DNA of 64,000 nt from Octopus bimaculoides (lineage: Eukaryota). The position numbers were made by a program, and so were the translations under genes. The notes below the pieces were generated by a model that made no database searches, had not been told where the DNA came from, and saw nothing but the letters and a program-made list of their open reading frames with translations. Of this stretch, positions 23,085 to 64,000 are shown piece by piece (within the stretch, counting starts at the first letter, position 1; every line of letters starts with the position of its first letter). The stretch is taken from NCBI RefSeq assembly GCF_001194135.2, contig NC_068988.1, forward strand, positions 5,453,084 to 5,517,083, read 5' to 3'.

Positions 23085-24835
23085 TTTTCCAAACTTGAAG
23101 ATTATCTCAAGAGAAATTAAAGATTGCTATGGCTGAATTTCGTCACATGTTAGACCTTGGAATAATTCATCCTTCTAGCAGTAACTGGTCAACACCTTTA
23201 GTTTTGGTAAAAAAACAAAATCTCACAAACTGGCATCCATGTGGGGATTTTAGACAAGTTAATGCGAAGACACAAGCAGACAAATATTCAATCCCACACA
23301 TTTATGATTTTGCAGCTCTGTTGGGTGGTTGTAATATCTTTTCTAAAATAGATTTAGTTGGAGCATACAATCAAATTCCTGTTGAAGAGAAGGATATACC
23401 AAAAACAGCAATCACACCTCCATCTGGGTCATATGAATTCCTTCGTATGCCTTTCAGACTGAGGAATGCAGCAAATACTTTCCATAGGTTCATTGATGAA
23501 GTAACAAGAGATTTACCTTTTGTATTTGTTTATAGAGACGATGTTCTCAATGCTAGTCCGTCAGAAGTCATGAAAATCACTTAAAACAAATTTTCAAAAG
23601 ACTGACTAAACATGGTAAAGTGATAAATCAATCAAAGTGTGTTTTCGGTGAACGTTCTATATCTTTTTAAGGTCATCTCATTGATAAAGGTAGAATTCGC
23701 CCACTGCCAGACAAAGTTGAAACTATTAATAAATTTCCAATACCGAATTCTTTAAGAAAGCTCCAGGAATATTTAGGACTCATTAATTGCTACCAATGCT
23801 TTATTCCACATTGCACAGAAAGAATATTTCCTTTGACTGAATTATTAAAGAATAGGAGAAAGAAAAATGAAGCTATAACTTCAAAAGATGAATTAAAGGC
23901 TTTTCCTGAAGCAAAATTATTGTTGGTAGTTGATGCTTCCGATGCTGGAATTGGTGGAGTTTTACAACAGTTTCATTGTGGTTCTAGGCAACCATTATCC
24001 TTCTTTTCAGAAAATTCAAGGTACCAGAAATGAAATACAGCGTTTTCGGCAGAGAATTGTTGGCAGCTTACTTGTCAATTAAACACTACAAACATCTTCT
24101 TGAAGGTAGGTCATTTACATAATTTACTGACCATAAACCATTGACACATACACTAAAAAATTCTTCTGGAAAATATTCTCCGAGATAAATTAGACACCTT
24201 GATTATATTTCACAGTATACTGTGGATATACGGTGTATCAAGGGTGTTGAAAATTCTGCAGCTGATGCACTTTCTTGAATGAATACTCTTTTACTTGTTT
24301 CAGTCATTTGACTGTGGCCATGCTGGAGCACCGCCTTTAGTCGAGCAAATCGACCCCAGGACTTATTCTTTGTAAGCCTAGTACTTATTCTATCGGTCTC
24401 TTTTGCTGAACCGCTAAGTTACGGGGATGTAAACACTCCAGCATTGGTTGTCAAGTGATGGTGGGGGGACAAACACAAACACACACATATATATACATAT
24501 ATACGACGGGCTTCTTTCAGTTTCCGTCTACCAAATTCACTCTCAAGGCTTTGGTCTACCCGAGGCTATAATAGAAGACACTTGCCCAAGGTGCCACGCA
24601 GTGGGAATGAACCCGGACCCATGTGGTTGGTAAGAGAACTACTTACTACACAGCCACTCCTGCACCTATAGCTACTTACCACACAGCCACTCCTGTGCCT
24701 ATATGTAGATTCATTGAATGTTAATGCATTAAGTTCGTTAAGCACTATCAATTTAGAAGAAATGTTTAAAGATCAAACTACTGATAAAAAATTTTCTTTA
24801 TATAAAGATTCCAGTTCTACTTCTTTGAAATTTAA
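23085..24835 (+). mobile_element. Ty3/Gypsy LTR retrotransposon pol fragment (RT, RNase H), degenerate, interrupted by a SINE
   Basis: GIIHPSSSNWSTPLVLVKK, GDFRQVN, FSKIDLVGAYNQIPV, YEFLRMPF, VYRDDVL, LVVDASDAGIGGVL, FGRELLAAY, FTIFTDHKPL. Confidence 0.92.
24290..24703 (-). mobile_element. tRNA-derived SINE inserted in Gypsy pol
   Basis: The minus strand begins with a tRNA-like head (GGAGTGGCTGTGTGGTAAG...GGTTCATTCCC) and contains a CA/TA microsatellite. The first 32 bp of the head are tandemly duplicated (24639-24670, 24672-24703). Confidence 0.8.
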
Positions 24836-31337: not shown

Positions 31338-32150
31338 CATCATCATCATCATCATCATCGTTTAACGTCCGTTTTCCATGCTGGCATGGGTTGGCTGGTG
31401 TGATTGGGGACTGGCAAACCAGCAGGCTGCACCAGGCTCCAATCTGATCTGGCAATGTTTCTACATCTGGATGACCTTTCTAACACCAACCACTCCAAGA
31501 GTGTAGTGGGTGCTTTATACATGCCACTGGCATCTACCACATTTGGATAGCACTTTTTATGTGCCATTGGCACAGGAGCCAGTCAGCAGGCACTGGCATT
31601 GACCCTGTTTGGATGGTGCTTTTTACATGCCACCAGCACAGGAGCTAGCCAGATGGAACTGGCATCGACCACATTCACATGGTGCTTTTTACATGCCACT
31701 GGTATGGGGAACCAGTCAGGGGCACTAGCACTGAGCCATGCTCGAATGGTGCTTAGGCGGCAATGGCCACAACTACAATTTCGATTTCACTTGACTCGAC
31801 AGGTTTTCACAAGCACATCATATCGTCTGATGATTCAAGAGTATTTTTAAATGGGCCGGTTATGCAACACTGGCATTGGCCACGGCTGTGATTTCACTTT
31901 ACTTGCTGGGACTTCTCAATTACAGCATATCTCCAAAGGTCTTGGTGTCTTGTCATTGCCCCTGTGAGGCCCAACGTTTGAAGGTCATGCTTTACCACCT
32001 CATCCCATGTCTTCCCAGGTCTGCCTCTTCCTCTGGTTCCTTCCACTCTTAGTGTGTGACACTTCTTCATACAGCTGTCCTCATCGACACGCAACACATG
32101 ACCATACCAGTGCAGTCTCTTGCAGACCACATCTCATCCTTCTTATGTCC
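31338..32150 (-). mobile_element. RTE LINE 3' portion (ORF2 C-terminus, 3' UTR, (ATG)n tail)
   Basis: ORF 31894-32130 LHWYGHVLR...GRGRPGKTWDEVVKHDL is continuous with the 3' UTR and tail. Confidence 0.88.
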
Positions 32151-33670
32151 CACTCTTCTCCGCTCTCTGTGTCTCCTGCCGCAATGTGGGTTCGTCTAGT
32201 ATCTCAGATAGAAACCTGTCCAGATGTTTCTTGAAAACTTCCACATCACCATCACGTAGACCTCTAATGTTGCTTGGCAGAATGTTGAACAATTGTAGGC
32301 CCTTGAAACCCAGACTATTGCAGTACTGTGTCCTTCTTTTAGATGGGGAAGATGAGATCTTTGGTATGATGCAGTGCCATCCAGTTCAGTGAATGGTATA
32401 GCTGTCAGTTCTTAAACTGAGAGCTAAACCCTCCAAGATCTTCCAAATATATATCACTGCATATCTCTTTCATCTTCTCTCTGGGAAACAAAGACTCAGC
32501 TCCCGTAGCCTCTCCCAGTAGCCCATCTTTTGCATTGAGTTAATTTTCTTTGTGTATTGGCACTGGATTGCTTTGAGTTCCACAGTTTGTTTCACACTCT
32601 CTGGAGACCATAGTTAGCAGCAATAGTCCAAGTGGCTGAGAACGAAAGTTGGTTCTGAATGTCCTCGAAATCCATTTAGCCACTCGTCTGTGCAGTGTTG
32701 CCATCTAGGTAATATTCATGTGGTATGTTGCATCATTGCTCATGTGAACCCCTTGATCATGCATGGGCTCTGACTTTGTGATTGTGTTACCTTCTGGTCC
32801 AGTTTATTCTGATTTTAGCCTGGTGTTGGGCTGATAGTGGAGTGCCTGAAATTTCATAGCATTGAACTGCATGTTATTTTTAGCCCATTTGTATATTTCA
32901 TTCAGGTCTTTCTGCAGTTTTATGATGTCCTCTGGGTTCTTGACTGCCTGTGATACTCCTGTGTCGTCAGCATAACTGACTGTACCATGGAGGGCATGCC
33001 TGAGAGGACCACCACAAATAGTAGTGGCGCCAGTACAGTTCCCTGTGGGAGTCCGCTGAGAATTGGTGTCTCTTCAGAGTGAGCACCATTGGCTACAACT
33101 GTCTGACTCTTGGCCCTTTACAAAGCCATGCAGCCACTCTCTCAGTTTCCCAGTAATACCAAGGTTTCGCAGCTTGTGACATATCATGCTATGATCAACC
33201 TTGTTGAAGGCCCTGGCAAAGTCGAGGTATATCACATTTACAGCTGACTGGTTTAGCTGTTGCTTCAGTACCCAGTCAAAGTGCTGCAGCAGCTATGTGA
33301 GGCAGTTCCTCCATGAACAGAAGCCATGTTGCATGTTTGTGAGAAGTTTGTTTTCTTCTAGGAACGTGATCAGCCTTTTCTGATAATGCGTTCCATTGTC
33401 TTGCCAACATGTGAGGTCAGAGAGATGGGCCTGTAATTTTTAGCATCTGCTCTGCTCCCTTCTTTATGGACAGGACATATTATATCCTCTTTTAGCATGT
33501 TGGGAAGTTTACTACATGCAAGGAAACTCCGCAGAAGTATCTGCAGTAGCTTTGAAAGAGCCCTTTTACATGTCTTTAAGAGAACAGTCGGGAGTCCATC
33601 AGAGCCTGTTACTGAGTTTGATCTCATCAATGGCCGATAGTACATCCTTTTCTGTCATGTTGATGTAATC
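32150..33670 (-). mobile_element. CR1/L2-like LINE reverse transcriptase fragment
   Basis: GSDGLPTVLLK...NYRPISLTSHVGKTMERII, then QHGFCSWR.C, DVIYLDFARAFNKVDH and ADDTG remnants. Confidence 0.8.
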
Positions 33671-39300: not shown

Positions 39301-40396
39301 ACTGGGATTATAGGCAGAGATAAATGTAACTGTTAATTTATCTAAGTCTTAGCTTAACTTATCTTATCACATACTCTGACTGCTTCACTTACCTTATCTA
39401 CCCATTTTTCTGCTAAAAGTACACCTATATCACCCACCCCATCAGTTGCCTACCCAAGAGAATTTGAACCTCTGTTTCTTACCTATAAGGAATCTAGCAG
39501 AGGCTTCTCTCCATTTTACTGTTTGCACATGTCTACATGTTGTCGCTCCAGCATTTCAGTGTTCTCATTGGTTCTGGGCCTTCCTTTCGTTTTGCTGCCA
39601 TTATTTGTGGAATAGGAAGGAAGAGTGAGAAGACAGTCATGGAACTTTTGTCAGCACCCGAAAAGAGATGTGTATATGCATGTTTATATCTGCATTTCTG
39701 CTTTACTGATTAACTATTAGTGTTGGTTTGTTTATGTTCTTGTAAGAACATAAGTTAGGCAAAGAGCAACCAATAGAATAAGTACCAATAAATAAAAAAT
39801 TAAGTGCTGGGTTTAATTTTAATGACAAAATCCCTTGAAGGTGGTATAGTTCAATGATTGAAACAAATAAAAAAAATATGTGGACCTCTGTTCGTTGCTA
39901 GTACCGCTGGACTGGCCCCTGTGCAGGTGGCATGTAAATACACCATTTTGAGCGTGGCCGTTGTCAGTACCCCCTGACTGGCCTTCGTGCTGGTGGCACG
40001 TAAAAGCACCCACTACACTCATGGAGTGGTTGGCGTTAGGAAGGGCATCCACCTGTAGAAACTCTGCCAAATCAGATTGGAGCCTGGTGTAGCCATCTGG
40101 TTCACCAGTCCTCAGTCAAATCGTCCAACCCATGCTAGCATGGAAAGCGGATGTTAAACGATGATGATGATGTATGTAGATGTTATATTTGTGTGAGGCA
40201 TACATAAGTGTTGAAACTTCTGGGAAATATTTTTCCTATTTATTCACTATTACATATATTTCATTTGCTAACAGGCATTACAAAATTGTACATGTAAGAT
40301 ATCTCCTATTAGAAATTCTATTCTTCAGACAGGGAATCAAATTATTTGATTTCCAATCTCCTGTTTTGATATATATATCTACAATTAATATTTTAA

Positions 40397-40614
40397 CCCT
40401 TTAGTGTTTAAACCAGCCATATCTGGCCCAAATATTCTATGTTTTATTTTCAAACTGGCTATATCTAGCCTCTCACACTTAACCTACATTGACATTCTAG
40501 ATATAAACAATCACATCATTGAAACCTCAAAGCTATAAGATAATGCATGATTAATTCAAAACAATTTGAGTAAAAAAATGTTACATTTAACAGAGTAATC
40601 TAAACACTAAAGGG
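40397..40614. mobile_element. piggyBac-type MITE (218 bp)
   Basis: TTAA on both sides; TIRs CCCTTTAGTGTTTA / TAAACACTAAAGGG; a related partial copy at about 30690-30800. Confidence 0.85.
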
Positions 40615-40715
40615 TTAAAGAAGCAAATAACTGAAATGAAAATGAACTAAAGATTAATATAAAGAAATAATGAAAACTATTTGTTGATGTAAATTTTTTT
40701 TGTTTTTTGTTTTAG

Positions 40716-40868
40716 GACTATTTGCGAGCTTGTCAAGATCAGATTGAACAAAAGGTTGCATATAATTTGTCGAATTTGAATATTCAAGAAGTTGATATTG
40801 CATCTAAAAATCATACTGTTAAAGAACACCCCACAACTCCAACAGGTGTAAATGACATAAATTTCTGA
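40716..40868 (+). CDS. CCND: Cyclin D exon 5 (terminal)
   Basis: DYLRACQDQIEQ...EHPTTPTGVNDINF*; total CDS 861 nt (286 aa). Confidence 0.95.
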   Translation, partial: DYLRACQDQIEQKVAYNLSNLNIQEVDIASKNHTVKEHPTTPTGVNDINF

Positions 40869-48400: not shown

Positions 48401-51136
48401 TTACACTCTGACGGGTAGAAAATATGTGCCAAGGTTTCCTATGAATAAATTTGCTTGTATTTTTTAGTAAACAAGTTGAAGTAATCCAATATAATTTGTG
48501 TTCTATTAAAGCAAATTATTTTAATACTGTAGTTTTTATAAATGATGAAATGCTATTGTGTTTGTACTGAAAACTGAGGATATTACAATAATAATAATCC
48601 TTTCTGCTATAGGCACAAGGCCTGAAATTTAGGGAGAGGGGACTAGCCAATTGACTCCAGTATTTTACAGGTACTTAATTTATTGACCCCTGAAAGGATG
48701 AAAGGCAAACTACTGCTAAGCATTTCATCCAGCACACTGCCTTAATAATAATGATGCAGTTATTTATCAATATTTGTCATAACTTACCTACAAAAATGAT
48801 CCCCTTTTGGAAATTATCCATAATTTATTTCGTCAGTTCAGAATAATTTAATTTAACAATTGCCTTTGTTTTATTTGTCCCTCTAATGTGTAACAGTAAT
48901 TTTTTTCCCTCACCTTACAGTTTATTTCTCAGTTATATAAACACATGTAGCAAATATCAAAAGTATTTAAAATATTTGATAAACATTTATGTACTACATA
49001 GTATGTGTTAGAAAACCTAAATCTAAAATGATTAAAGCATATTTTGAAACTTTTCCCCGTGGAACTTTATAATCAGATGAGTTTCATGGTCTATTGACCA
49101 TTCATCAGAAGAGCACTCCTTTTGCCCATGAAGAGAATTTAGAGCCTTTGCTATTTATAACAAATACAATCAAGAACTTAGCTATGCTAGGTAGACTATT
49201 TTCTATACTATTCATTTGCCAGTGGCTTGAATTATGCCCAACACAGCAAGTGTAATTTTATATGCATACATCTTTCTATCCCATTCAGCCCCACTACCGT
49301 ACTTGTTTTCAAAGCAAAAGACATTTTAATCCACAGGTCTTTGAAAGCACATTGTGAAGGATCATTTAAACATGATTCACAGCATTACTCAAAGCAAAGC
49401 TGTGCAATATCAGTATTTACTTATGAGGTGCTGGGTTGGTCCAGTTCAGTTGTATAAGACCTGCAGACTGGAATGCAGCCTAGAAATGGTTGGTTTTGAA
49501 CTTCTTAATGGCATAACCATGCCACTACCATTTATAAAATATATTAGCTTTCGATGGAAACTCCTTCATGTACTGTTCTATTTGTTATCTTACCTATTCA
49601 AATTGGGATGCCACTTGTATGATGGTCAATAGCTTTGGACCTGATGCTATTCAATCTTTTTTATCACCCATGCTGTTACAAGGTGGCTTAAAAAAGACTC
49701 CCAACATATTGTACTGTACAATTTCTCCCATTCAACAGCTTGACAGTTGGGACTGAGCTTACTAGAGATTATAACAGTTTACTTGTGGAAGCACTGAGTA
49801 CTCTTTTTGTATATCTATAAGCCCTGTTCTCAAATAGAAATATGTAGACACATCACATGAGTAGGTGAGCAAATGAAAGAAAGCAGCACTCAACATTGTT
49901 GTAGTTTTATGTATTTAATAACCTGTTGACTTAACTTTAGAGTCATGGATGTAAGAAAACATGCATGTCCTTATACGTCTGGAGTCAGATTGGAGAGAAT
50001 TTAAGATGGTTTCACAGTGGCAATATTTAGGCCTCCATTGGTCAGTTCAGCTAGTCCACAACAGCAATTCTTGCATTTTTGCTCCCTGCAGTTGATAGGA
50101 TGGATGTTAGTGTCAATTGGTCCTCTATGAAGAATGGCAATTCAGCAACAGCAGTTACTATTTCATTTGGCAGTATCAGGTTACATATCAATGTGTTGTG
50201 CATGGTTGCTTGCTCTAAATACAGATGGATGATAGTACATGGAATAGGAGATAATCTTGCTGGGGATTAACAAGGATCACAACTCTTAAGCAGCTGTGAA
50301 ATTTCTGAGTTTCCAGTGGCCAACAGATTAAAGCTCATTAACAAGGTGTATCCTTGGAAGTGACTGCAATAGGATGGATACTATATGTAGTTGACAACTG
50401 TGAACACCAGATGAGTAAGGAGGAGTCCTGGAGTTAAAATTGGTTACTTAGAGTATTATGTATTTTGCTAAGCCAATTCTGTTTTCCATTACATTTTTGG
50501 CACCAAGTCATTTCTATGCATGAGGCTTTTAATAGAATATTTCTATCTTTTCAGTGTTCTTACCAACTAAATTTTTCTGACACTGTTTCAAATTTTCAGT
50601 CTCAGCTATGAGAATATCGTTCCTTTTTTTATTTTTATTTTGTCTGTATAACACTGCAATCCATATTTCAACTTTTTTTTTTTATCAATTTCAAAACAAT
50701 CGTTTCTTTTTTAGTCTATACAATATCAGTAATATTACTATGTTTGTTGCAGTTAAAAGCAACAGACATCATTATTAACATGAGGCACCCGTTATTGAAG
50801 TTGAGAGCAGAAACATTAGGGATAGTCACTGAAATGCTGAAAATATCCAGCAAAAATGTGCTAGCTATCTGCATAGTTGAAAAAAAAAATATGGAGATAT
50901 ACTCTGTGACTGACACAGATTTGGTCAGCTTGGGGCTATAGTAAGAGACATTTGCCTGAGGTGCCATGCAGTGAAGCTAAACCTGAACCCAGGTAGTCGG
51001 GAAAGAAATTTCTTCACCTTACAGCCATACCCAAGAAAATGCATTCAACCCATGGAAGCATGGAAAGAAAAAAAAAAAAATGAGGATGATGAGACTATTT
51101 TAGCACAACAATCTCATAATTTGATAATCTTTGTTA

Positions 51137-51362
51137 TTATTTCAGTTCCTCAGAGATGTCAACTTGTTTAAAAAGCAGATTTAATTTTTCTTCCAAGGAT
51201 GCCTTCTCAGCTTGTTTTTCAGCTAATGTTATGTTCAATAAATTAAAACTTGCAGGCAATTTTTCATAGACTGACAATTTCATTTGAATTGTGGAAGTTA
51301 ATCTCTGCAATTTGGATACCTCCTGAGAAGTTTTCCTCAAGTGTCCATGATGTAGATGAGAT
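51137..51362 (-). CDS. HAUS1: HAUS augmin-like complex subunit 1, terminal coding exon
   Basis: tttttcag acceptor (minus). (K)SHLHHGHLRKTSQEVSKLQRLTSTIQMKLSVYEKLPASFNLLNITLAEKQAE aligns with human SLSHQSL..KLARLKQQTIPLKKKLESYLDLMPNPSLAQVKIEEAKRE. Confidence 0.85.
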
Positions 51363-51829
51363 CTGAAAAATGAATGTGAAGATCATTTATTTTATAAGAC
51401 AAGAATAAAATCAGTAGTCAAACTAACATGTCTTAATCAAATATACAAAGATACTGTAAATAAAAATTATATCGTGCTGAAACCTTAACCAAAATTTGGT
51501 AGACCAAGTTAATATAAATTTACTCAATAAAACTATATACAATTATAAATAAGTGGAACATATCAAAATTATTGCTAATTAGCACTACATGTATGTACAC
51601 TTATTTAGGGTCTCTGGGCCAGGTCAAAATTGTATTTAGGGTCATGACCAAAAAAGTTTGGGATCAACTGTCTTAAGGTATAGAGGACATTATCAAGCTT
51701 ATTGAAAATAAGTAAATGAAATTTAGTAATTGCACCAATAGCCTTCAAAAGTTATTTGAAGCAGTATTTCAAGTCCTTTTAATCTATTTATACAAGCAAA
51801 TAAAACTAAAAGCCACCTGATAACCTATC

Positions 51830-54600
51830 AATCAGGTGACTCTGCTAGCCAGATTGATTTCATTCTCACCAGAAAACAGGATTCATGCTTGCTCTTAAAT
51901 ACAAAGACCCTCCCTGGTGAAGAATGTACGCCCCAACATAGACTAGTTATTAGTGACTTTAGACTCGAGGCCAGAAGGATGCCAAAAAGTAGACTAATCT
52001 GGAAAAGGACTTGGAAGGTTAAGAACCCTTCACATGGTCAGATGTTTAGGGATATCTTTACCGAGAAATTTGAGGAGAGAGCAGAGGAGCTACAGTCCTG
52101 TGACACAGAAGGCAGCTGGGAAGTCCTGTAAGACAGCTTGCTGAGTGCCTCAGACCAAATCTGTGGCTGGTGCAATGTCCCTCCCAGACCTAGGGTGACG
52201 TGGTGGTGGAACAATACTGTAGATAGGGCCATTAGAGCAAAGAAACAGGCCTGGAAGAGTGGGGGTAGCAGGGGACTGTATCAGATAGCCAAAAGGGAAG
52301 CTGGGAGACAGGAAATATATAGCCAAGGAAGTAGCGGAAAAGAAGTTTGCCAATGTTCAGCGATGTGAGGAGCAAATAACTGAAGTATTTCGGATTGCAA
52401 GACAATGTGTGAGAGAAAACCGTGATGTCATGGGAGAGAAATGTTCCCGTACTCATGATGGTGCCATTGCGTTTAATGATTCTGCAAAGAAAGAGGCTTG
52501 GAGATGCCATTATGAAAGACTGCTGAATGTGGAGAATGAATGGGAGGAGGAGGAGGATTGTCTGCCAAAGGTTGACCCAATTGAGGGACCAGCTATCCGA
52601 ATTGACATTACCCCGGTACTTAAAGCAATTAAGGATATGAAGACAGGGAAAGCACTTGGCACATCAGGAATCACTGCTGGGATGCTTAAAATATCAGGTG
52701 GTGTGAGTTATGGTCTTGTCACCCGCATTGTAAATCAGGTAGTTCATGAAGGAGTCATACCCAATGACTGGTGTGGCAGCACCATAGTCAACTGCTACAA
52801 GGGTAAAGGTGATGCTCTAGATAGAAATAACTACAGGGGTATCAAATTATTGGATCAGGTGATAAAAGTTACAGAGAGGGTCATAGCCCAACTAATTAGG
52901 GAGAGAGTTAGCCTAGATGAGATGCAGTATGGTTTTGTGCCAGGCAGAAGCACCACTGAGGAAACTACAGGAGAAAGCCTTTGACAGGGACCCCAATCTC
53001 TTATCTGGTCTATACAGAAACTGGGAATAGACAACAAGCCTTGTACAGGGATGCTATCAGTAAGGTGAGAGTTGGCAACGAGTATAGTGTAGAATTCCAG
53101 ATAGAAGTAGAGGTTCACCAAGGACCAGTCCTCAGGCCCCTCTTATTCATCATAGTCCTCCAGGCAATAACAGAGGAATTCAAGACAAGCTGCCTCTGGG
53201 AGCTCCTCTATGCTGATGACTTTGCTGTAATAGCCAAGTCAATGCTAGAACTAGAGACAAAGGACCTTAGGGTTAACCTAGCAAAAACCAAAGTCTTAGT
53301 AACTAGGAAGGCTGACAAATCACAAACCCCTTCAGGTAGATGGCCCTACTTGATCTGTAGAAAAGGCATAGGTAGAAACTCCATACAATGTACCTGGTGC
53401 AAGCTATGGATACATAAAAGGTGCAACAATATCAAAGGAAGGCTAACTGGGAAGATAGTTTTTGTGTATGACAGATGCATAGGGGCAATAAACACTGAAA
53501 ATGTACAGCAAACAGATTCCATCACTGTGAGGGAAAAAAACTGGAAGTAGTTGATAGCTTCTGCTACCTAGGCGACAAAGTCTGTAGTTGGGGTGGTTGC
53601 TCTGAGAGTGTAGCAGCTAGAATGAATAAGAATAGCTTGGGCAAAGTTCAGGGAGCTCCTACCTCTGCTGGCAACTGAGGGTCTCTTGCTCAGGATGAAA
53701 GGTAGACTGTATCATGCAAGTGTGCAAACAGCCATGCTACATGGCAGTGAAACATGGGTCGTGACTGCTGAGGATATGTGTAGGCGTGAGGGAAATGAAG
53801 CTAGTATGATCTGCTGGATGTGTAATGTCAGTGTGCATACGCGACAGAGTGTAAGCACCTTGAGAGAAATGTTGGACATAAGAAGCATCAAATGTAGTGA
53901 GAAGAGAGATGACTGTGCTGGTATGGTCATGTGTTACATATGGATGAGGGCAGCTGCGTGAGGAAGTGCCACTCCCCAACTGTGGAAGGAACCTGTAGAA
54001 GAGGTAGACCCAGGAAGACATGGGATGAGGTGGTGAAGCATGACCTTTGAACTTAGGAGATATGCTGTGATTGAGAAGACCCAGCAACTAAAGTGAGATT
54101 GCAGCCATGGTTGATGCTAGTGTCATTTGATCAAATCACTTAAACGCATCTTTAGAATGAGATAACCATCTTCCATATGATTTTTACTATCAAATAGAAA
54201 CAGGAGCCCTATTTATTTAATTTAATATACCATGACAGGCCCATTTAAGAGTACCCTTAATGTGTCGGGCAATATGATATGCTCAAGAAGACCTGTTGAG
54301 TCAAGTAAAACCAAAATCGTAGCTGTGGCCAGTGGCCCCTGACTGGCTCCCTTGCCAGTAGCACGTAAAAAGCACTATCTAAATGTGATTGATGCCAGGC
54401 TCGTCTGACTGACTCCTGTGCCAGTGGCACGTAAAAAGCACCCACTACACTCTTGGAGTGGTTGGTGTTAGGAAGGGCATCCAGCTGTAGAAACCTTGCC
54501 AGATCAGATTGGAACCTGGTGCAGCCGCTGGCTCTCCAGACCTCAGTCAAAGCGTCCAACCCATGCCAGCATGGAAAACGGATGTTAAACGATGATGATG
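51830..54600 (+). mobile_element. Long degenerate RTE LINE (APE end, RT, C-terminus, 3' UTR) antisense in the HAUS1 intron
   Basis: GEECTPQHRLVISDF, NYRGIKLL..VTERVI..QYGFVPGRST, LLYADD, GRPRKTWDEVVKHDL; (ATG)n tail near 54590; internal deletion in RT near 52975. Confidence 0.92.
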
Positions 54601-55609
54601 TTGCAAACACTGTTTCTCTGATGATATTTGTTTACAACTAGCACCCAAAGTGAAAACAAGTAGATACAAATACATATATATATATATACCCTCAGGCCTT
54701 CAAAGCAGGCTATCCACATGCTAGAAATAGCAGCCAAATCTCACAAGACTGCGATAACATAATGTAATCTACCTACTCAGTTTTTTGCAAAGATTTCTTT
54801 CAGAGTAATTTCCCAGAATAATATGACAAAGTAATTCATGTGAAATTAAAGTTTTTTTTTGTTTTTTAACTTCTTTTAAAACTTTTTTTCGAATTTTTTC
54901 CATCAATCTACGTGGGAAAATACGGAGATTAAGAATATGAAAAACATAAATTTAAATTTATTTTTTTCAGAATCGTAATCTTCGTATTCCGCAGAAGACA
55001 AAAAATTTCCGGAAAAAGTGAGAAATGAAGGGTGGGGGAATTTAAATTTTGAAAGGTCATACATCGGCTTGAAAGAAATGAAGCGAGTATGATCCGCTGG
55101 ATGTATAATGTCAGTGTGTATATATGACAGAGTGTGAATGCCCTGAGAGAAAAGTTGGATGGAAGCAGCATCAAATGTAGTGTGCAAGAGGGACGACTAT
55201 GGTGATGTGTTGAGTATGAAGACAGTTGTTCTTATTAAATGTGGAGAAAGGCTTATTTTCGAGGAAATGGAACGTGTATAAAACATGGTTTGCTTGAAAT
55301 ACCGAAACGAAATATTGTTTACAAGAGAGGTTGACTCCAACATCATTAATATATATTAAAATATTTTAAATCCCCCATACTGAACGATTACCATGGTTTT
55401 AATTAAATACTTTATTTCATTCAATTTGCCATAAAGGCATTTAATTAAATACTTATTTACTCACCTCCTCTCGTAATATACATACTTCGCTCGAAAATAA
55501 GCTGTGATTTTTAATATTTAGTTTTCAAACTTGCAAGTGCAGAGTTAGAACTTTCAATCGTAATTAGTTTTGTACATAATTTTGTAAGAAAACAAAAAAT
55601 AATTCATAC

Positions 55610-56229
55610 TTAACGCCTGTTTGAGTTAATTTCTTGTTCTCTTGGTTAAACCGATTTTTATAGGAATTGTTCTTTGACGCATAATATTTACTCATTTTCA
55701 TCTCTTCTTCTAATTTCGAAGAGGTCATTCTTTGACGTAAACAGTCAGTTGTTTCTATGAGTTGTTCGTTATCAATTTGGCCACTGCTGGAGGAATTCAA
55801 GTCGAAAAGGCTTTGCTTGTGAGCGATGCAATCATTCTTCAACAGAGCAACTTTTTGGTGCAAATACATTAATGCCATTATATAACAATTGTCACTGAAA
55901 TTATCATTAATTTGATTCGAAAACAGTTTCTGGGCAAGTGTGGTCAATGTTTTCAGATTACTGAAGCCAGACGTATTTAGTTGAGAAGGAACAACGCCAA
56001 GATATTCTGTGGCTATTTTGTAATACAACATTTCTTGTCGGTACTCGAGGATTTTGTCATTTAAATCGGATAATCTTAACGCATCGTTCTTCTTTGAAAT
56101 TTTGTTTATACACATCAGCTGCTTCAGTACACACAAACTTCGGTTATTAGCTTCATACAGATAATCCCCTTTTCCTAATATTTCTTGAAGCCATTCTTCA
56201 ATTTCAAACGAATCTCCAACATCCGACAT
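55610..56229 (-). CDS. HAUS1: HAUS1 first coding exon (620 nt)
   Basis: EIEEWLQEILGKGDYLYEANNRSLCVLKQL...LSDLNDKILEYRQE matches human VAAWLKKIFG...YEVNPRTTEILHHL...EDLKQKASEYESE. The phase-2 GTATGA donor at 55609 joins 51362 in frame; 281 aa total. Confidence 0.85.
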
Positions 56230-56483
56230 GATTAATTGCAATCAAAATTTAAATCCCGCGCCGTTGCAAGTGCGCATGACAGGAATTACGTCATCGACAT
56301 CAGGTGCGCGTGCTGGTAATTCAGAACTGGAATCTGAGGTTAGTGCCAACATTCTAGCCTAGAGTCTAACTTTTTTTTATATTTAAAGGCAAATTATAAA
56401 TATGATGGGGCAAAGTTTCAGGCTGGATCTTTCTGAATTGACGGGCACCACTTTTTATTTATGTTTTATTTAATGTGTTTTCT

Positions 56484-56590
56484 GGAGGCGCAATGGCCCA
56501 GTGGTTAGGGCAGCGCACTCGCGGTCATAGGATCGCGGTTTCGATTCCCAGACCGGGCGTTGTGAGTGTTTATTGAGCGAAAACACCTAT
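56484..56590 (+). mobile_element. tRNA-derived SINE head (3'-truncated)
   Basis: A box TGGCCCAGTGG and B box GGTTTCGATTCC. No tRNA acceptor stem; truncated by a CAGGGTG-type DNA transposon end at about 56595. Confidence 0.7.
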
Positions 56591-57039
56591 ATATACAGGG
56601 TGCTGTGAATTAATTGCTGTCTAAATTACGCAAAAATGAAAATAGCACTGACATCTCATTTTAACTGATATATTTACCAAAATTACATAAAAATATCTTG
56701 AAATACTAAAGAATACATTTGTAAAAGTTTGATAGTTGTCATAGAGACTTTAGTCTCTCTCTATCACCTTTTAACAGCATTATAAATGAAGAGACATCGG
56801 AACAATTAACAACATAATAAAAAGGTTTTATTTATGATGATGCTTGGTTTCACAATTCCTGTCATTCTACTGAGCCGCCGCTGATTAAATTGTAGGTTTG
56901 GTAATGGAAGGTTAAGGTCTTCCTTGATGCCTGCCAGAGAACAGTGTAAAAGGGCTTCGTGGAGGAGCGAGGTGTTGTTACGTAGAAGGTCTGAGCTCAA
57001 CTCACCGAGATAATGAAAGTAACTGCTTAAGTACGAGTT

Positions 57040-57105
57040 TTACTACGCATGCGCAACTCGAGGGGCTTCCGGTGGTGAAGTCCCCTGCGCATGCGCAGAA
57101 TAGTA
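57040..57105. promoter_or_regulatory. CpG-rich putative HAUS1 promoter with two NRF1-type motifs and an ETS-type site
   Basis: CGCATGCGCA 57046-57055, perfect TGCGCATGCGCA 57086-57097, CTTCCGG 57066-57072; minus-strand donor G|GTGAGT at 57006/57005. Confidence 0.5.
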
Positions 57106-57164
57106 CTTCCTCAATGGCAGCTATAATTTTGCGCCACTACACATTTATTCTATAAAATCGCCAT

Positions 57165-58305
57165 TAGCTTCAACCAAGCCTCAAGAAGACTTCGGAATCT
57201 CCTGCGACTCTTCTGGACGGTCTCCTCGTTCAAGTTGGAGAATGTTGCTATAATCCTTGCCTTCAGGTCAACATTGGTATTACAAGGAATTTTGTTGATT
57301 CCACGTCCAACTGTTCCCCATACATAGTAACCCAGGGTGTTGCAATCTCTGGAGTTTTTAAAGGGTGATGTGGTCTGGCCACATTTTAGGGGCGATGTGG
57401 TCGGAGAAACTGTCTGGCAACTATGATTAGGTTCTCCTGCTTGTGTGGAGGGTGAAGGGTCCTGTTGCTACCCACTTGACCCAGATCAGCACTACCTCCT
57501 CCGGGCACTCGATGTAGCTTCTGAGGCCGTGTTGGAAGATGAATGGAGGCATTACGTCGCCATCACTAGTGATTACTCCAGACACCATGATGTTCACTGG
57601 AGGCTTGATTTTTATCACTCTCGGTACGTTTTGGTGACACGGTTGGGGACAAACCAACGGTATTTCTATGTGTTAACCATCTAATCCTGGCAGGATTTTT
57701 TCTCGTCTGATAAAAACCAATGCTTCTTCAGTTGGAGAAAATACTTGAGTTTGTTCAGAATCTTCGTAGCGCGGTCTTTCCTCTTTTCCTTGATGTTTGG
57801 GTTAAAAATTCGCTCTTTCTCATCTTGTATGAAGAATACCGAATGTTTTCATGCACTACCTGCTTGAGTAGAGACTGAGATACTCTCATGACTCTGGCGA
57901 TGGACCTGTTTGATTTGGAGGGATCGTTTTCAATCATGGCATGGATATGACTAACAAATTCGGGATTTCTTTTCTGATCAGAACCATCAGCGTGAGATTA
58001 CCGATCTGCTGTACCTTCGTAATCACCTTTAGACTCATCCAACTTTTTCCGAATCCTCTGCACTGTCTTCAGATTGACACGCAAGCACTCTGAAATATTC
58101 GTATTGGAGCTTCCGGCGCGAATGCCAAAGAGTACAGCATTTCGTTTCCAAATTACTCGCAGAGTAAATTGCACCATGGGGCTGTTTTTCTCACACACGA
58201 TACCCAACTGGCCCTACCATACTGTGTAGTTGGCAAAATAAAAAAACAAACAATGCTCATGCGTGAAATTAAAAATATCGAATCGCGACAATTTACCCAC
58301 CGTAT
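57165..58305 (-). mobile_element. Degenerate Tc1/mariner-superfamily (maT/DD37D-like) transposon
   Basis: AVLFGIRAGSSNTNISECL, DPSKSNRSIAR...HENIRYSSYKMRK, KPPVNIMVSGVITSDGDVMPPFIF. Confidence 0.8.
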
Positions 58306-58730: not shown

Positions 58731-59852
58731 TGTACATATATAAACATATAGTTCATATTTATATAAAAGAATAAAAGGAAAATGGAGATTGCTCAGTCAT
58801 TAATTGTTTATTAACTGCAAATTAATCCCTTATAGATATATATAAACACACGCATACAGAATCACACACACACACATATGTACATATACACGATGATATG
58901 TATATACACACACATCACATACGTATTCTTTCATCTTCTTTGGCAACTTCAAAAAACGAATGAGTGCATATTGATTATTCTTGTAACATCAACATAAACG
59001 ATTATATTGTTGACAAAGTTTAACAGATGTATGATGCAATGGTAAATATACCCATTTGCTATCACTTAGGCACTTTTTCATTGAAGTCTATGCAATAGAG
59101 GTGTGTTAATTGTCGTTCAAGAAGATATTATTAAGTGTTGATAGGAAAACTAAATACAGAGAACACTTCCGCCCATGTTTATCGAATTATAATAAGGAAG
59201 AAAATATTAACTTCTTTTACAAGAAAATGTCATTCATTTACAGAAAGTCACACATGCACGTGCGCACACAAACAGAGGCCACTGGAAGCTATATATTTAG
59301 TTGTCAATTCTGTTATATCATAGTGGAAAGAACGTATATACTAACGCCTGCTAAATTTTATTTCCATTTGCAGAAAGAAGATATTTCATAACAATTAAGA
59401 GCTCAACATTACCTTCATAATCTAACAGTCTAACATCTACTTATAGGAGAAAATAATTTTCTTATATGTTGAGTCTAAAATTAATATTTGAATTCATTAA
59501 AGGAAGCATATCGGAATCAAATTTTGCCTCAATACCTTTGATAATTACATTATTTCAATTGGTTTCAGTTTAACGGGAAGAGTCACACATGTGGTCTCCT
59601 TTATATATACATATACAATAATCCTTTGAGATCTCAGAAACTTTTTCTGAATCTCCCTGATTCTTTTAATGTGTTTGTTCCCTGGTATTAACTTGATATT
59701 AATTAATATCTAATTTTTTACCCTACTATTTTAATTTTATAAATATATATATATACATACACACAGATATACGTTAAGCCACTTAGAAAGACTATTCAAG
59801 ACATTAAGAAATAAAGCGTGCGTCTTCTTTTCTACCGGTTTCAGTTGCCGAT

Positions 59853-60683
59853 ATGTCATCTCTTTTTGAAGTTGACGGAACTGGAGAAAATATGAAAACA
59901 AATGAAACACGGTTCATGAAATTGCTAGAATTTCATCGGAAAATTAATATTATTACGAAATCACTGATAAATGTCCCATCACTGAAATCACTCAAATTTA
60001 AAACAATCTGTTTTTATTGCGTTTATCTAGTGTATTGTATATATTTGATTGTAAGACCCATTCGTGACATAGCGCACTTAATACGTCAGAATAATAGCAA
60101 TACTGATGAAATATTTGCAAATATTTACAAAATATTTGCCCAGTGTTTCTTTTCTCTCTATTGTTTGACGAAAATGTTCAGCGAATCTAAAGACGAGCAA
60201 ATAATTGAAGCATTCAGTGGACTGACGGTCCAAGAAGACGATAGAAAATTCTATAATTCTACATTCATATTTTCCCATAAATCCCTCTATTTTATTATAA
60301 TGATACCTACCATGCATTACTTTATTATGGAANNNNNNNNNNNNNNNNNNNNNNNNNNNNNNNNNNNNNNNNNNNNNNNNNNNNNNNNNNNNNNNNNNNN
60401 NNNNNNNNNNNNNNNNNNNNNNNNNNNNNNNNNNNNNNNNNNNNNNNNNNNNNNNNNNNNNNNNNNNNNNNNNNNNNNNNNNTTAGTAAATGAATCATTA
60501 CAATTATGCACGGGATATATCGTAATTGGTAGTATTGCAGGATGTTGTATTGCAACTTACGGAATTATAAATGATTCATTTAGTAAGGCATTCGATATTT
60601 ACATTTATGCTACAATTCTTGTGGCTGCTAGCCTACTGGCTTTGATGATAATGGTTTGGAGAGGTGTTCGTTTAAACAAATCC
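59853..60683 (+). CDS. Multi-pass membrane protein, gustatory receptor-like (GRL/7TMIC) candidate; first exon, contains 150 N
   Basis: Open on both sides of gap 60333-60482, with five visible hydrophobic helices. The C-terminal part (CCIATYGI...LALMIMVWRGVRLNKS) resembles GRL TM5-TM6. Phase-0 GTAAGT donor at 60684. Confidence 0.6.
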
Positions 60684-62319
60684 GTAAGTTATATATTATA
60701 TTTCTATAATTCTCACATTTCATTATATCTATAATTCTCACATTTTGATAATAATTATTACATCATAAAAGCTGATAAATTGACAGACACCTGAAAGGTA
60801 CGATAGAATATAACGCTTCATTTCTCTAATCTGTTATTTTATTCCACCAACGCCCACCTTATTAATTATGTCTCTAGGTTGTATTAATAAAATACGCTTG
60901 AAATACTTGACAAAAATTAATCTCCCTCATTTGTCTTTTCCTGCTTCTGTTTTTCTTTTCTCAACCAGTCTCCCACTTTCTCCACTCTTTCCTTGAGACA
61001 TTGCAACAATATCTCGTAAGATGTGTTGTGAATAAGTCACACTAAATTTCGGTTCTGCCAGGATTGCAGGCAAATTTAGGTGAGGAATGCTATTCGTATA
61101 GACATACTGTCGCACGATCTCAATGATTATTTCATGAATAGTCAAACAGGCTGCAGTATCAAAATCAATCTTCGAGGTTTCAAANNNNNNNNNNNNNNNN
61201 NNNNNNNNNNNNNNNNNNNNNNNNNNNNNNNNNNNNNNNNNNNNNNNNNNNNNNNNNNNNNNNNNNNNNNNNNNNNNNNNNNNNTTTATATGAGCGTACA
61301 TATATGTGCATGTGTGTTAAACTGCTGAGGTCTAAAAAAAAAACAGGCTGCAATGCATTCTTCAGCTATTGGAAACTTAACTTTTTTCCTCACTGCACTA
61401 AAAAATATCAGACTACGCGACCAGAATACCACCAAGAGAATCCTTGGTGATTTGCTGTTGGAAACCCACCAAGATATCAGGAGGGACGGGCAATCAGCCC
61501 CACATAACAAAGCCAAGTGGCCTAATTTATTAAAATGATCCGATTTCCTGTGGGAAATGGGTTTTTAAGTGTGTGTATATGCTTGATGTTGTTTTTTAAT
61601 GATTTGTATGTGTAAGAAAATAGTATTGAAAGGAATATTCAAAGACAAAGAGTCTTCATATTATTAAAATACTTAGAATTAAAATAATATATTATAAGAA
61701 GAGCTTTTTCTAAGTTCATGCGATTTATTAAGAACACATTCCCATATATCGCTATATGTTTGTATGTATGGTGAATATAAGCTTACTGCTGTGGAGTTGT
61801 ATTTCTAAGGACCCATCTACTCCCTTTCAATTAATGCGTTCCGATTCCCCCTTCACTGTTTTCTGTATCTCTCTTTCTCCTTTACTCTCTCTCGTTGCTC
61901 ACACGTGACCATCGTCCATCTTTCTTTTCCTCAAGTGATATTACAGACTAGACGCATTCTTATTTGTCTCCTCTTCTATCTTTTCTCTTGTCAAAGACAA
62001 TATTCCATTCCTCCAGCGTTCGCTACTTCACCTCGTCTGGCCTAACGGCCCTCCATGTTTGTCTCCACTGTCCTGCTTTTGTTAACCAAATTGGATCCTC
62101 CGCAAATCCCAAATTTTATTTTGGTTCGCGGGTGCAACTGCCTTTTTGAAGACGCATATTATCATTAATTGCTCGGAATGAAGAGTAGATGGACAGCCGA
62201 CAACTGATGAAGGGTCGTTTTTTATGTTACTGTCTTGTTTTCCATTTGTTTCTCTCATTGTTCGCATGTAAAAAATGTTTTCGTATTTCATGTTGTTTAC
62301 GTTTTAATGATGTCCTGTA

Positions 62320-62373
62320 CTCATATATACATATATATATATGTAGAGATATGTATGTATGTATGTATGTATG

Positions 62374-62419
<46 letters not shown>

Positions 62420-62810
62420 ATTCTGTAAAGCTTAATTTAATCTTAATTTTTATAAATTGATTTTAATTGAGTTTTTACCTGTAACTTTGGATTTTGTCCT
62501 TAATATTATTATTATTATTATTATATATATATATAGAACAAATAATAAATGAGTATATGCATATATACGTGCAGGTATGTGCATACCCACGTCTACCTGT
62601 ATATATAGGTGCATATCTGGGTACAGGACATTGCAAAAACGTAGACAAGAAAATAATAATAACGAGAGTACAGAAAACACACAAACCACATAGAGAACAT
62701 TTTCCTTCATCAGCTACCCCCGTTTTAACACCGGCGTTATATATATATGTATATATGCATATATATTTATATTGTTATATGATCGAACGCTGCGCATCCA
62801 TTTCCAAGTA

Positions 62811-62872
<62 letters not shown>

Positions 62873-63559
62873 TATCTATCTATCTATCTATCTATATACA
62901 TATATATATACATATATATATATATGGAGAGAGATAGATTGATAGATAGATAGATCAATACATACATATATGTTTGTTCATGTGTGTGTGTTTGTGTGTG
63001 TATATATATGTATATATACATACATACATACATGGTGTATTGAACTGTGTTGTGTAAATCATGTAGAATATACATTTAATAATAACAGTTCTTCATTTGT
63101 ACACTTTTCGCATTAATACAAATTGAAGCTTTGTAAGATTCATAATGCCCGACCATATCTCATGTCTCAACAGGTCATTTGCTAAATAAACCACTTAACA
63201 TCCAAGAAACTTAAACAGACACACGCGCGCGCGCACACGCACGCACACACACACACACACACACACACAATAACTATATTTTCTATACGTGGAAGAAAGG
63301 AATAAATCGGATTATGCAAACACTCACACATACAGACACACACATGCACAGAAATCACACCCACGCACAAACATACACGCGTATTTATTTAAGGAGACAT
63401 ATGTAATTAATTATGTGACTTCCTTCAAATAAGATTACTGGGCCGACAGACTCACATTAATTTCAAATTAATGCTTCGTATCACTAATTCATATCAATGC
63501 AATATTGATATTTTACTTATCATCTTAAAAAAAATAATACGCATATATATTTATATATG

Positions 63560-63595
<36 letters not shown>

Positions 63596-63650
63596 CTTCT
63601 GCATGTGTATGTATGTATGTATGTATGTATATATGTATGTATGTATGTAG
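62320..63650. repeat. Microsatellite-rich tract ((TA)n, (ATGT)n, (CA)n, (TCTA)n)
   Basis: Directly visible simple repeats. Confidence 0.95.
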
Positions 63651-64000
63651 TCTTATAATATGCATTTAAATGTATGGGATATGTAAAAGATATTGGCTTA
63701 ATATAATACATACAGTTACAATAAGTCGTTAAGTAAGCACAGAAATGATTGGCTGTCCCATATAATATATGGCTTTTCGTTCAAAGGCGAGCGATCACGT
63801 ATATTGAGAGAAAATCAAAGTATTATTTGGACTTTCCTAACGAATACAATGCATAGACAACATTATATTAGGTGTTTTGAACTTTAAAATTTAATAATTT
63901 CTCATGTGTTGTTCATGACTGTTTGGTTTTATGTGGAGTTCATAGACGACCTTCGATATTAATCACAGTTAACCATAATAAAACATTTAAAGTTAATATC

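What the first reader, a model, noticed from the sequence alone, without database searches (positions are those of the whole stretch)
59853..60683. Candidate gustatory-receptor-like (GRL/7TMIC) chemoreceptor in an octopus-like genome
Seen: a long first exon with hydrophobic segments TICFYCVYLVYCIYLIV, IFANIYKIFAQCFFSLYCL, FIFSHKSLYFIIMIPTMHYFI, [gap], GYIVIGSIAGCCIATYGII and IYIYATILVAASLLALMIMVW, then RGVRLNKS and a phase-0 donor. Established: GR/OR/GRL channels have an inverted 7-TM topology, C-terminal phase-0 introns and a TM7 TYhhhhhQF motif. GRLs occur in some molluscs, while the best-known octopus chemoreceptors are nAChR-derived chemotactile receptors. Inference: a highly divergent member of a different chemosensory channel family. 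TM4 and the long loop should lie in the N gap, which is probably larger than 150 bp. TM7 was not found. A weak candidate for the next exon is 63738-63871 (HRNDWLSHIIYGFSF...IIWTFL), with a poor acceptor.
Basis: partly seen in the sequence, partly recalled or inferred. Interest (0 to 1): 0.72.

Follow-up and report, generated by a model that had tools for sequence, protein, structure and literature searches.

The report
Octopus gustatory-receptor-like gene, first exon
The stretch is the long first exon of an unannotated octopus gene of the insect-type taste/smell receptor channel family (GR-like, 7TMIC); its middle is hidden in an assembly gap and its last, pore-forming helix lies beyond the window.

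Summary
An open frame runs 59853-60332, the N gap follows, the frame resumes at 60483-60683, and it ends at a phase-0 GTAAGT donor.

It has 14 relatives among 1.84 billion proteins (E 1e-47 to 1e-11). Those that carry a name are Octopus sinensis or O. bimaculoides "uncharacterized" proteins.

Every relative carries both flanks on one uninterrupted exon, 104-105 codons apart. The flanks are therefore collinear, and the gap should hide about 312-315 bp, not 150.

Spliced relatives add three short exons behind phase-0 introns. The last encodes TM7 with TYILVVIQT, the GR hallmark TYhhhhhQF with F replaced by T.

- Pfam 7tm_7 passes its curated cut-off on two isoforms and reaches E about 1e-5, end to end, on four more.
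- Two AlphaFold models hit almost only insect OR/Orco/GR structures in the PDB.
- Predicted topology is 7 TM with the N-terminus inside.

In O. sinensis, 5-7 tandem long first exons precede one shared set of three TM7-side exons, as at insect Gr28b/Gr39a loci.

Its candidate next exon (63738-63871) is not. This gene's own TM7 exons are outside the window.

Verdict: a new, divergent member of a known kind. A chemosensory role is inferred, not shown.

The parts
59853..60332 (+). 5' part of the long first coding exon: cytoplasmic N-terminus, TM1, TM2, the acidic TM2-TM3 loop and most of TM3. A possible alternative start is Met14 at 59892.
   Evidence: Translation. phmmer finds relatives at E down to 1e-47. 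tblastn gives 35-55% identity to paralogous exons of O. sinensis. Alignment.
60333..60482 (.). Assembly gap inside the exon. By homology it hides the end of TM3, TM4, the long intracellular loop and the start of the TM5 helix. About 312-315 bp are expected, not 150.
   Evidence: Paralogues have 104-105 codons between the flank-homologous parts. Alignment columns.
60483..60683 (+). 3' part of the same exon: the LVNES helix end, TM5 (GYIVIGSIAGCCIATYGII) and TM6 (IYIYATILVAASLLALMIMVW), then RGVRLNKS.
   Evidence: Translation; the other frames are closed. Identity to relatives is 41-57%. It carries all 14 nearly invariant family residues.
60684..60689 (+). Phase-0 splice donor GTAAGT, at the codon homologous to the donor of every paralogous first exon.
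   Evidence: Sequence. The same GTAAG donor sits at the same codon in L001, in 7 exons of L002 and in 5 exons of L003.

Best explanation
59853-60683 is the long, 'variable-type' first coding exon of a gustatory-receptor-like (GR/GRL, 7TMIC superfamily, Pfam 7tm_7) gene of an octopod.

The exon encodes the intracellular N-terminus and TM1-TM6, the part that forms the ligand pocket in insect GRs and ORs. Its phase-0 donor at 60684 should be spliced to three short downstream exons. These encode the TM6-TM7 loop, TM7a and the pore-lining TM7b (TYILVVIQT in paralogues). They lie beyond the window's end.

By analogy with solved insect GR/OR structures, the mature protein of about 375-390 residues would assemble into a tetrameric ligand-gated cation channel.

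In O. sinensis the family sits in clusters. Several tandem long first exons precede one shared set of three C-terminal exons, and NCBI isoform models join different first exons to the same tail. One locus can therefore give several receptors with different ligand-facing halves and one pore helix. The window's exon may be the first such exon of a cluster, because non-GRL genes lie upstream of it.

Shown:
- The reading frame, the donor and the homology.
- Family membership of the paralogues.
- Cluster architecture in O. sinensis.

Inferred:
- Splicing of this exon to a TM7 tail.
- Intactness of the hidden 104-105 codons.
- Channel function and a chemosensory role.
For: Frame and donor.

Homology:
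- 14 relatives, E 1e-47 to 1e-11.
- They are named as O. sinensis LOC118764607/LOC118764608 and O. bimaculoides LOC106880719 isoforms.

Tail and gene structure:
- Spliced relatives carry the tail VHSITRSIHYMQFQ-DIKPEVVAK / ILVFLNRLTTESHGIDVGGCFVITPSSTLT / MIGSFITYILVVIQTKSL.
- That tail is encoded by three exons behind three phase-0 introns.

Pfam 7tm_7:
- 27.4 and 30.3 bits against a cut-off of 26.6 on P0011 and P0015.
- 25.1 bits on P0017.
- 25.3-25.6 bits, E about 1e-5, on three conceptual full-length isoforms, collinear over model positions 23-367 of 370. One of these is the window exon's closest full-length paralogue.

Fold:
- AlphaFold2 model of P0016 (pLDDT 69.9): the top 15 PDB hits are all insect OR/Orco/GR, probability 0.96-1.00. 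The next hits have probability 0.2 or less.
- Replicate with P0017: 13 of the top 14 hits are OR/GR, best E 1.4e-3.

Topology: seven hydrophobic segments; K+R count is 21 in predicted inner loops against 2 in outer loops.

Clusters:
- L002 has 7 first exons and one tail.
- L003 has 5 first exons and one tail.
- Isoforms X2 and X4 of LOC118764607, and X1 and X3 of LOC118764608, use different first exons with an identical tail.

The same architecture is described for insect GR/OR genes (PMC6175461). The phase-0 introns and the TM7 motif are named as GR hallmarks in PMC9998090.
Against: - The window's own fragments give no Pfam hit. They lack TM4, the intracellular loop and TM7.
- The TM7 exons of this gene were not found in the remaining 3.3 kb, so the splice partner is unseen.
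- About 105 codons are unread and could hold a stop or a frameshift. One of the 7 first exons in L002 has an in-frame stop.
- Most Pfam scores sit just below the curated cut-off. A profile search of PDB sequences found nothing.
- Foldseek E-values are modest (1e-3 to 0.2), and the TM7 region of both models has pLDDT below 50.
- No expression data are available for the window's exon. Shared-tail splicing in O. sinensis rests on NCBI gene models, not on reads I inspected.
- The closest paralogue seen is only 50-55% identical, so no orthologue was found.
Confidence: 0.85

Rival explanations
1. A dead copy: a GRL first exon that is no longer functional. It would be a pseudo-exon with a lesion in the unread gap, or an orphan exon without downstream TM7 exons.
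For: - 104-105 codons are unread.
- In O. sinensis L002, one of 7 first exons has an in-frame stop, and two inverted fragments of first exons occur.
- L003 has one fragment.
- P0013 looks like a rearranged copy.
- No TM7 exons lie within 3.3 kb.
Against: - Both visible parts (227 codons) are open in AT-rich DNA, where stops are frequent.
- All 14 nearly invariant family residues of the visible part are kept.
- The GTAAGT donor is intact at the homologous codon.
- In O. sinensis the tail exons lie 3.4-4.3 kb or more from the nearest first exon and tens of kb from the first one. Their absence from 3.3 kb is therefore expected.
Confidence: 0.15
2. A genuine GRL channel subunit whose job is not external chemoreception. 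It could be developmental, internal-state, light or temperature sensing, as reported for some GR/GRL members.
For: - The literature notes non-chemosensory GR/GRL roles: a cnidarian GRL in body patterning, and Gr28b in heat and light sensing (cited in PMC11526382; PMC6175461).
- No expression data are at hand.
- NCBI models of the paralogues are partly truncated (X3 and X4 start inside the exon). This may mean little transcript support.
Against: - Tandem expansion of divergent ligand-side exons (35-60% identity between neighbours) on a nearly invariant pore-side tail is the pattern of chemoreceptor repertoires.
- This is circumstantial.
Confidence: 0.3
3. Not a 7TMIC at all: a chance open frame, or a membrane protein of another fold such as a GPCR, a transporter or an nAChR-like chemotactile receptor.
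For: - The window fragments have no Pfam hit on their own.
- The family profile finds no PDB sequence.
Against: - Homologues at E 1e-47.
- 7tm_7 is the only recurrent Pfam hit, collinear over the whole model.
- No Cys-loop or GPCR domain was hit.
- In Foldseek, ABC transporters and a GPCR appear only at probability 0.44 or less and TM-score 0.23 or less. OR/GR structures score probability 0.96-1.0 and TM-score up to 0.55.
Confidence: 0.02

Closest known systems
Insect gustatory receptors and animal GR-like (GRL) proteins (Pfam 7tm_7, PF08395; 7TMIC superfamily)
   Same: - Seven TM segments with the N-terminus inside.
- Length of about 375-390 residues.
- A long first exon followed by three short exons behind phase-0 introns.
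- A TM7 motif TY+5 hydrophobic+Q.
- Pfam 7tm_7 aligned end to end.
- Predicted fold matching BmGr9, Gr43a, Orco, MhOR5, AaegOR10 and AgamOR28.
   Different: - Very divergent: about 10-15% identity to solved insect receptors.
- Most members score just under the Pfam cut-off.
- The last motif residue is T, not F.
- Relatives detectable by sequence were found only in octopods (14 proteins in 1.84 billion).
- No ligand or expression is known.
Alternatively spliced insect GR/OR loci (Drosophila Gr28b, Gr39a and Gr23a; Blattella Gr60a-m)
   Same: Tandem long first exons (TM1-6), each with a phase-0 donor, lie upstream of one shared set of three short exons encoding the C-terminus and TM7. This is seen in O. 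sinensis L002 (7 first exons) and L003 (5 first exons), with isoform models using different first exons.
   Different: - It occurs in a mollusc.
- The clusters span 40-70 kb or more, with large repeat-filled introns.
- An internal alternative acceptor in the first shared exon adds or removes 14 residues (VHSITRSIHYMQFQ).
- For the window itself only one first exon is visible.
Octopus chemotactile receptors (CRs, nAChR-derived pentameric channels)
   Same: Both are candidate ionotropic sensory receptors of octopus, expanded in tandem.
   Different: They are unrelated in sequence and fold. No Cys-loop receptor domain is hit. The fold here is the tetrameric 7TMIC type, not the pentameric type.

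Membership tests
GR/GRL (7TMIC, Pfam 7tm_7) | Sequence match to Pfam 7tm_7 at or above the curated cut-off (26.6 bits) | tested here: inconclusive
   - The window's own two fragments give no hit. They lack TM4, the loop and TM7.
- Close relatives pass: P0011 scores 27.4 and P0015 scores 30.3 bits.
- P0017 scores 25.1 bits. Three conceptual isoforms score 25.3-25.6 bits, collinear over model positions 23-367 of 370.
- The feature is met for the family and not directly for this incomplete exon.
GR/GRL (7TMIC, Pfam 7tm_7) | Seven transmembrane helices with an intracellular N-terminus | tested here: met
   - Full-length paralogue P0016 has seven hydrophobic segments. K+R count is 21 in predicted inner loops against 2 in outer loops.
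- The AlphaFold models show long helices at the same places.
- The window shows TM1-3 and TM5-6. TM4 is in the gap and TM7 is outside the window.
GR/GRL (7TMIC, Pfam 7tm_7) | TM7 motif TYhhhhhQF | tested here: inconclusive
   - Paralogues have TYILVVIQT: T, Y, five hydrophobic residues and Q are kept, and F is replaced by T.
- The window gene's own TM7 exon is not in the window.
- The motif definition is from PMC9998090.
GR/GRL (7TMIC, Pfam 7tm_7) | [quoted passage not shown] | tested here: met
   - The window has a phase-0 GTAAGT at 60684, at the homologous codon.
- In O. sinensis L002 and L003 all three introns are phase 0, and the last exon starts MIGSFITY.
- The second and third introns of the window's gene are unseen.
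GR/GRL (7TMIC, Pfam 7tm_7) | OR/GR fold: packed 7-helix bundle, long TM4-6 projecting into the cytoplasm, split TM7a/7b | tested here: met
   - Foldseek against the PDB gives OR/Orco/GR as the top 15 hits (model 1) and 13 of the top 14 (model 2). Probability is 0.96-1.0 and TM-score 0.35-0.55.
- The models have helices of 50-52 residues at TM4 and TM5, and two C-terminal helices (336-352 and 369-386).
- The C-terminal region has pLDDT below 50, so the TM7 split is only suggested.
GR/GRL (7TMIC, Pfam 7tm_7) | Forms a tetrameric ligand-gated cation channel | not testable with these tools
   Needs expression, electrophysiology or cryo-EM.
Alternatively spliced GR locus (Gr28b/Gr39a type) | Several tandem long first exons spliced to one shared set of three short C-terminal exons | tested here: inconclusive
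   - The architecture is present in O. sinensis L002 and L003, with NCBI isoforms joining different first exons to the same tail.
- In the window only one first exon is present and nothing lies upstream. The region downstream is outside the window.
Cephalopod chemotactile receptors / Cys-loop channels | Neurotransmitter-gated ion-channel ligand-binding and TM domains | tested here: not met
   No such Pfam hit on the window fragments or any relative. No pentameric channel appears among the Foldseek hits.
Rhodopsin-like or other GPCR | GPCR 7TM fold or domain | tested here: not met
   No GPCR Pfam hit. One receptor entry that is probably a GPCR appears in Foldseek at probability 0.08 and TM-score 0.14 (7f83_B). 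The charge bias predicts an N-in topology, opposite to GPCRs.

The most novel reading that the evidence does not exclude
Octopods possess a lineage-specific, so far undescribed repertoire of GR-like 7TMIC channels. It is organised in clusters of alternative 'variable' first exons (the ligand side) spliced to shared 'constant' TM7 exons (the pore side). That is the same gene logic as insect Gr28b/Gr39a. It would form a second ionotropic chemosensory system beside the nAChR-derived chemotactile receptors. The window's exon would be the 5'-most variable exon of a further, unannotated cluster.
Probability: 0.35. Interest if true: 0.65.

Novelty: new member of a known kind. Interest (0 to 1): 0.5.

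Why it matters
Work on octopus chemosensation has centred on nAChR-derived chemotactile receptors and on GPCRs.

This exon belongs to a family that NCBI lists only as "uncharacterized protein". I found no open-access paper tying GR-like genes to octopus. Subscription papers, and the octopus genome paper itself, could not be read.

- If these GRLs are expressed in suckers or the olfactory organ, they are a second class of candidate ionotropic chemoreceptors in cephalopods.
- The O. sinensis loci share a layout with insects: a long first exon, three short phase-0 exons, and alternative first exons on a shared TM7 tail. This bears on how old that gene structure is.
- Practically, the gene in this window is missed by annotation. 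No identical protein is on record, probably because of the gap.

Tried and rejected
- **Pfam on the window fragments and on P0001:** no 7tm_7 hit. The signal needs the TM4-5 loop and TM7.
- **Family profile against all PDB sequences:** nothing at E<=10. Only fold comparison worked.
- **TM7 exons in the window:** tblastn with all relatives at E<=10, plus a listing of open frames in 60684-64000, found nothing.
  - A short exon hidden in the 100-N gap at 61185-61284 cannot be excluded.
- **Further first exons in the window:** none.
- **Orthologue of the window's exon:**
  - The best matches are 50% identity (L003:1457-2413) and 55% over 74 residues (L003:59368-59586, cut by the locus end).
  - O. 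sinensis and O. bimaculoides orthologues are 88% identical, so no orthologue was found.
- **Exact-product look-ups of P0011 and P0017:** not on record.
- **Shared upstream motif before first exons:** only about 20 nt (CAGTTGC.G.TATG-like) is shared by the window, L001 and one L002 exon. There is no family-wide element.
- **Bacterial-type promoter/terminator scan:** irrelevant here.
- **Second AlphaFold model (P0017):** less confident than the first (pLDDT 61.5), but it gave the same hits.
- **Literature:** Robertson 2003 and the 2015 octopus genome paper are not held.

Full report
**1. What is in the sequence**

From the ATG at 59853 a frame stays open for 160 codons, up to the N run at 60333. 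After the run, 60483-60683 is open in one frame only (LVNESLQLCTGYIV...RGVRLNKS, 67 codons). The other two frames carry many stops.

The frame ends on a complete codon, followed by GTAAGT at 60684. That is a phase-0 donor.

The stop-free run 59808-60332 is the fourth longest in the 64-kb window. The longer runs are retroelement frames (two) and a HAUS1-like frame. Shuffles of the window give 0.08 runs of 160 codons or more.

Met14 (59892, MKTNETRF...) aligns with the start of most paralogues and may be the real start.

**2. Is it a gene? Relatives**

An exhaustive HMMER search of 1.84 billion representative proteins found 14 relatives, with E from 1e-47 to 1e-11.

The word-indexed searches and the cluster look-up put names on the annotated ones:
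- Octopus sinensis LOC118764607, isoforms X1-X4 (XP_036361417 to XP_036361420).
- Octopus sinensis LOC118764608, isoforms X1 and X3 (XP_036361421, XP_036361423).
- O. bimaculoides LOC106880719, isoforms X1 and X2 (XP_052825891, XP_052825892).

All are called "uncharacterized protein". The remainder are open frames on short Logan contigs.

No protein identical to the window's is on record. This copy is therefore unannotated.

**3. The gap**

Most relatives are open frames called on genomic DNA. They read through the same GTAAGT donor (the "VS.." tails; L001).

In all of them, and in the 12 paralogous exons mapped in O. sinensis, the left-flank and right-flank homologous parts lie on one uninterrupted exon. 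They have the same order and strand and are 104-105 codons apart.

The two sides of the gap are therefore collinear parts of one exon. The true gap should be about 312-315 bp.

That 150 N happens to be a multiple of three means nothing. The hidden part corresponds to the end of TM3, TM4, the long intracellular loop (YEFNK.A.EAQRY...) and the helix ITEICN.HD.LS..L that runs into the visible LVNES. Whether it is intact here is unknown.

**4. The missing C-terminus, seen in paralogues**

Spliced NCBI products continue after the donor. One example is ...RLHAA | VHSITRSIHYMQFQDIKPEVVAK | ILVFLNRLTTESHGIDVGGCFVITPSSTLT | MIGSFITYILVVIQTKSL.

On the O. sinensis chromosome (locus L002, CM016866.1) these are three short exons at 75234-75305, 79184-79273 and 81267-81323. 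All three introns are phase 0. A second locus, L003, has the same layout.

The last exon carries TYILVVIQT. This is the GR hallmark TYhhhhhQF with F replaced by T.

**5. Family tests**

Pfam 7tm_7 (cut-off 26.6 bits):
- P0011 scores 27.4 bits and P0015 scores 30.3 bits.
- P0017 scores 25.1 bits.
- Among ten conceptual full-length isoforms (first exon plus tail), five hit 7tm_7.
- Three of those five score 25.3-25.6 bits (E about 1e-5), collinear over model positions 23-367 of 370. One of them is the window exon's closest full-length paralogue, L003:1457-2413.
- No other family recurs.

Topology: hydropathy of P0016 shows seven segments. K+R is 21 in the loops predicted inside and 2 in those predicted outside, so the N-terminus is intracellular.

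Fold, first model (P0016, mean pLDDT 69.9, pTM 0.67; residues 334-389 below 50):
- The top 15 PDB matches are AaegOR10, AgamOR28, ApisOR5-Orco, Orco, MhOR5, BmGr9 and Gr43a.
- Probability is 0.96-1.00, alignments are full length, and TM-scores are 0.37-0.55.
- Probability then drops to 0.2 or less (ABC transporters, designed proteins).

Fold, replicate (O. bimaculoides P0017, pLDDT 61.5): 13 of the top 14 hits are OR/GR, best E 1.4e-3.

Weak points:
- The E-values are modest.
- The TM7 region is poorly modelled. Only five nearly identical tails were available for the alignment.
- A sequence-profile search of the PDB found nothing.
- The window's own fragments give no Pfam hit.

**6. Architecture of the family's loci**

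In L002 (91 kb), tblastn maps seven + strand first exons of about 1 kb:
- They sit at 9527-10519, 12449-13402, 31361-32314, 39876-40835, 51136-52095, 56579-57532 and 69989-70966.
- Each has a phase-0 GTAAG donor at the homologous codon.
- One (56579-57532) has an in-frame stop.
- Two inverted fragments of first exons are also present.
- A single set of the three tail exons follows.

In L003 there are five intact first exons and one fragment, then one tail set. Another first exon begins 10 kb further on.

NCBI isoforms join different first exons to the same tail:
- X1/X2 against X3/X4 of LOC118764607.
- X1 against X3 of LOC118764608.

An internal alternative acceptor in the first tail exon adds or removes 14 residues.

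I did not inspect reads. The sharing rests on gene models plus the absence of any other tail exons in these loci.

**7. The window's copy in context**

The window holds only this one first exon. Upstream lie:
- a HAUS1-like frame on the other strand (55564-56241; Pfam E 1.5e-19);
- transposon remnants;
- a Med28-like exon.

If a cluster exists here, this is its 5'-most member.

Only 3.3 kb follow the donor. In O. sinensis the nearest first exon is 3.4-4.3 kb from the tail and the first one is tens of kb away. Missing TM7 exons are therefore expected.

The best paralogue identity is 50-55%. O. sinensis and O. bimaculoides orthologues are 88% identical. No orthologue of this copy was retrieved.

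Dispersed repeats of the window match introns of the O. sinensis loci at 78-93%. This agrees with an octopod origin.

**8. How it most likely works**

Shown: the exon encodes the N-terminus and TM1-TM6 of a GR-like protein and ends in the family's conserved phase-0 donor.

Inferred:
- It is spliced to three short exons supplying TM7a/7b.
- Four subunits form a cation channel whose pore is lined by TM7b and whose ligand pocket lies in the exon-1-encoded bundle, as in solved insect ORs and GRs.
- Where first exons share a tail, a locus yields receptors with different ligand sides and one pore helix.

A chemosensory role is the default inference for an expanded GR-like family, but it is untested. 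Non-chemosensory GRLs exist.

**9. Verdict**

It is in fact strengthened by the TM7 motif, the introns, Pfam and the fold of paralogues.

It is a new, highly divergent and unannotated member of a known superfamily, not a new kind of system.

The open literature I could search does not link GR-like genes with octopus. Key subscription papers were not readable, so "undescribed" is provisional.

Noticed in passing
L002 (O. sinensis CM016866.1:83161909-83253231, reversed) 9527-81323; L003 (CM016866.1:82738771-82798359) 1457-49589: Two GRL clusters lie about 0.36 Mb apart on one chromosome, on opposite strands. Each has 5-7 tandem long first exons and a single set of three short phase-0 C-terminal exons. 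The layout matches insect Gr28b/Gr39a-type alternative splicing. Another first exon starts at L003:59368.
   Followed up: yes
L002 75234-75305 (and L003 46673-46741): The first shared exon has an internal alternative acceptor (cag|GAC at 75276). Isoforms therefore differ by a 14-residue insert, VHSITRSIHYMQFQ, in the TM6-TM7 loop (X1/X3 against X2/X4).
   Followed up: partly
L002 56579-57532; L002 38153-37778 and 49665-49282 (minus strand); L003 6109-6486: Decay inside the clusters: one first exon has an in-frame stop (LGNY*FKI), and there are three truncated copies, two of them inverted.
   Followed up: partly
window 55564-56241 (-): A 225-codon open frame matches Pfam HAUS1 (augmin subunit 1) at E 1.5e-19 over positions 1-207 of 236. 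It lies 3.6 kb upstream of the GRL exon and diverges from it. It looks like a single large exon.
   Followed up: partly
window 19910-20257 (+): An open frame whose first 26 residues match the C-terminal end of Mediator subunit Med28 (E 7.6e-5, below the Pfam cut-off). A Q/P-rich tail follows.
   Followed up: no
window 23099-23584 (+), 52289-53550 (+), 15427-15825 (-), 57400-58210 (-): Retroelement reverse-transcriptase fragments (RVT_1, E 1.8e-14 at 23129-23584; weaker elsewhere), and remnants of a DNA-transposon-like HTH/transposase frame broken over several frames.
   Followed up: partly
window 24284-24670 and 22130-22650: Short dispersed repeats match many places in the introns of the O. 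sinensis GRL loci at 73-93% identity. They are probably octopod SINE-like elements.
   Followed up: no
window 59834-59852; L001 215-233; L002 9508-9526: About 20 nt just upstream of the ATG (…CAGTTGC.G.T|ATG) are shared by the window's exon and two relatives, but not by the other first exons. In two of the three it contains a possible AG acceptor. Whether a 5' UTR exon is spliced here is open.
   Followed up: partly
window 61185-61284: A second assembly gap (100 N) lies in the intron 0.5 kb after the donor. It is long enough to hide a 69-72-bp exon, so absence of the first tail exon from the window is not absolute.
   Followed up: no
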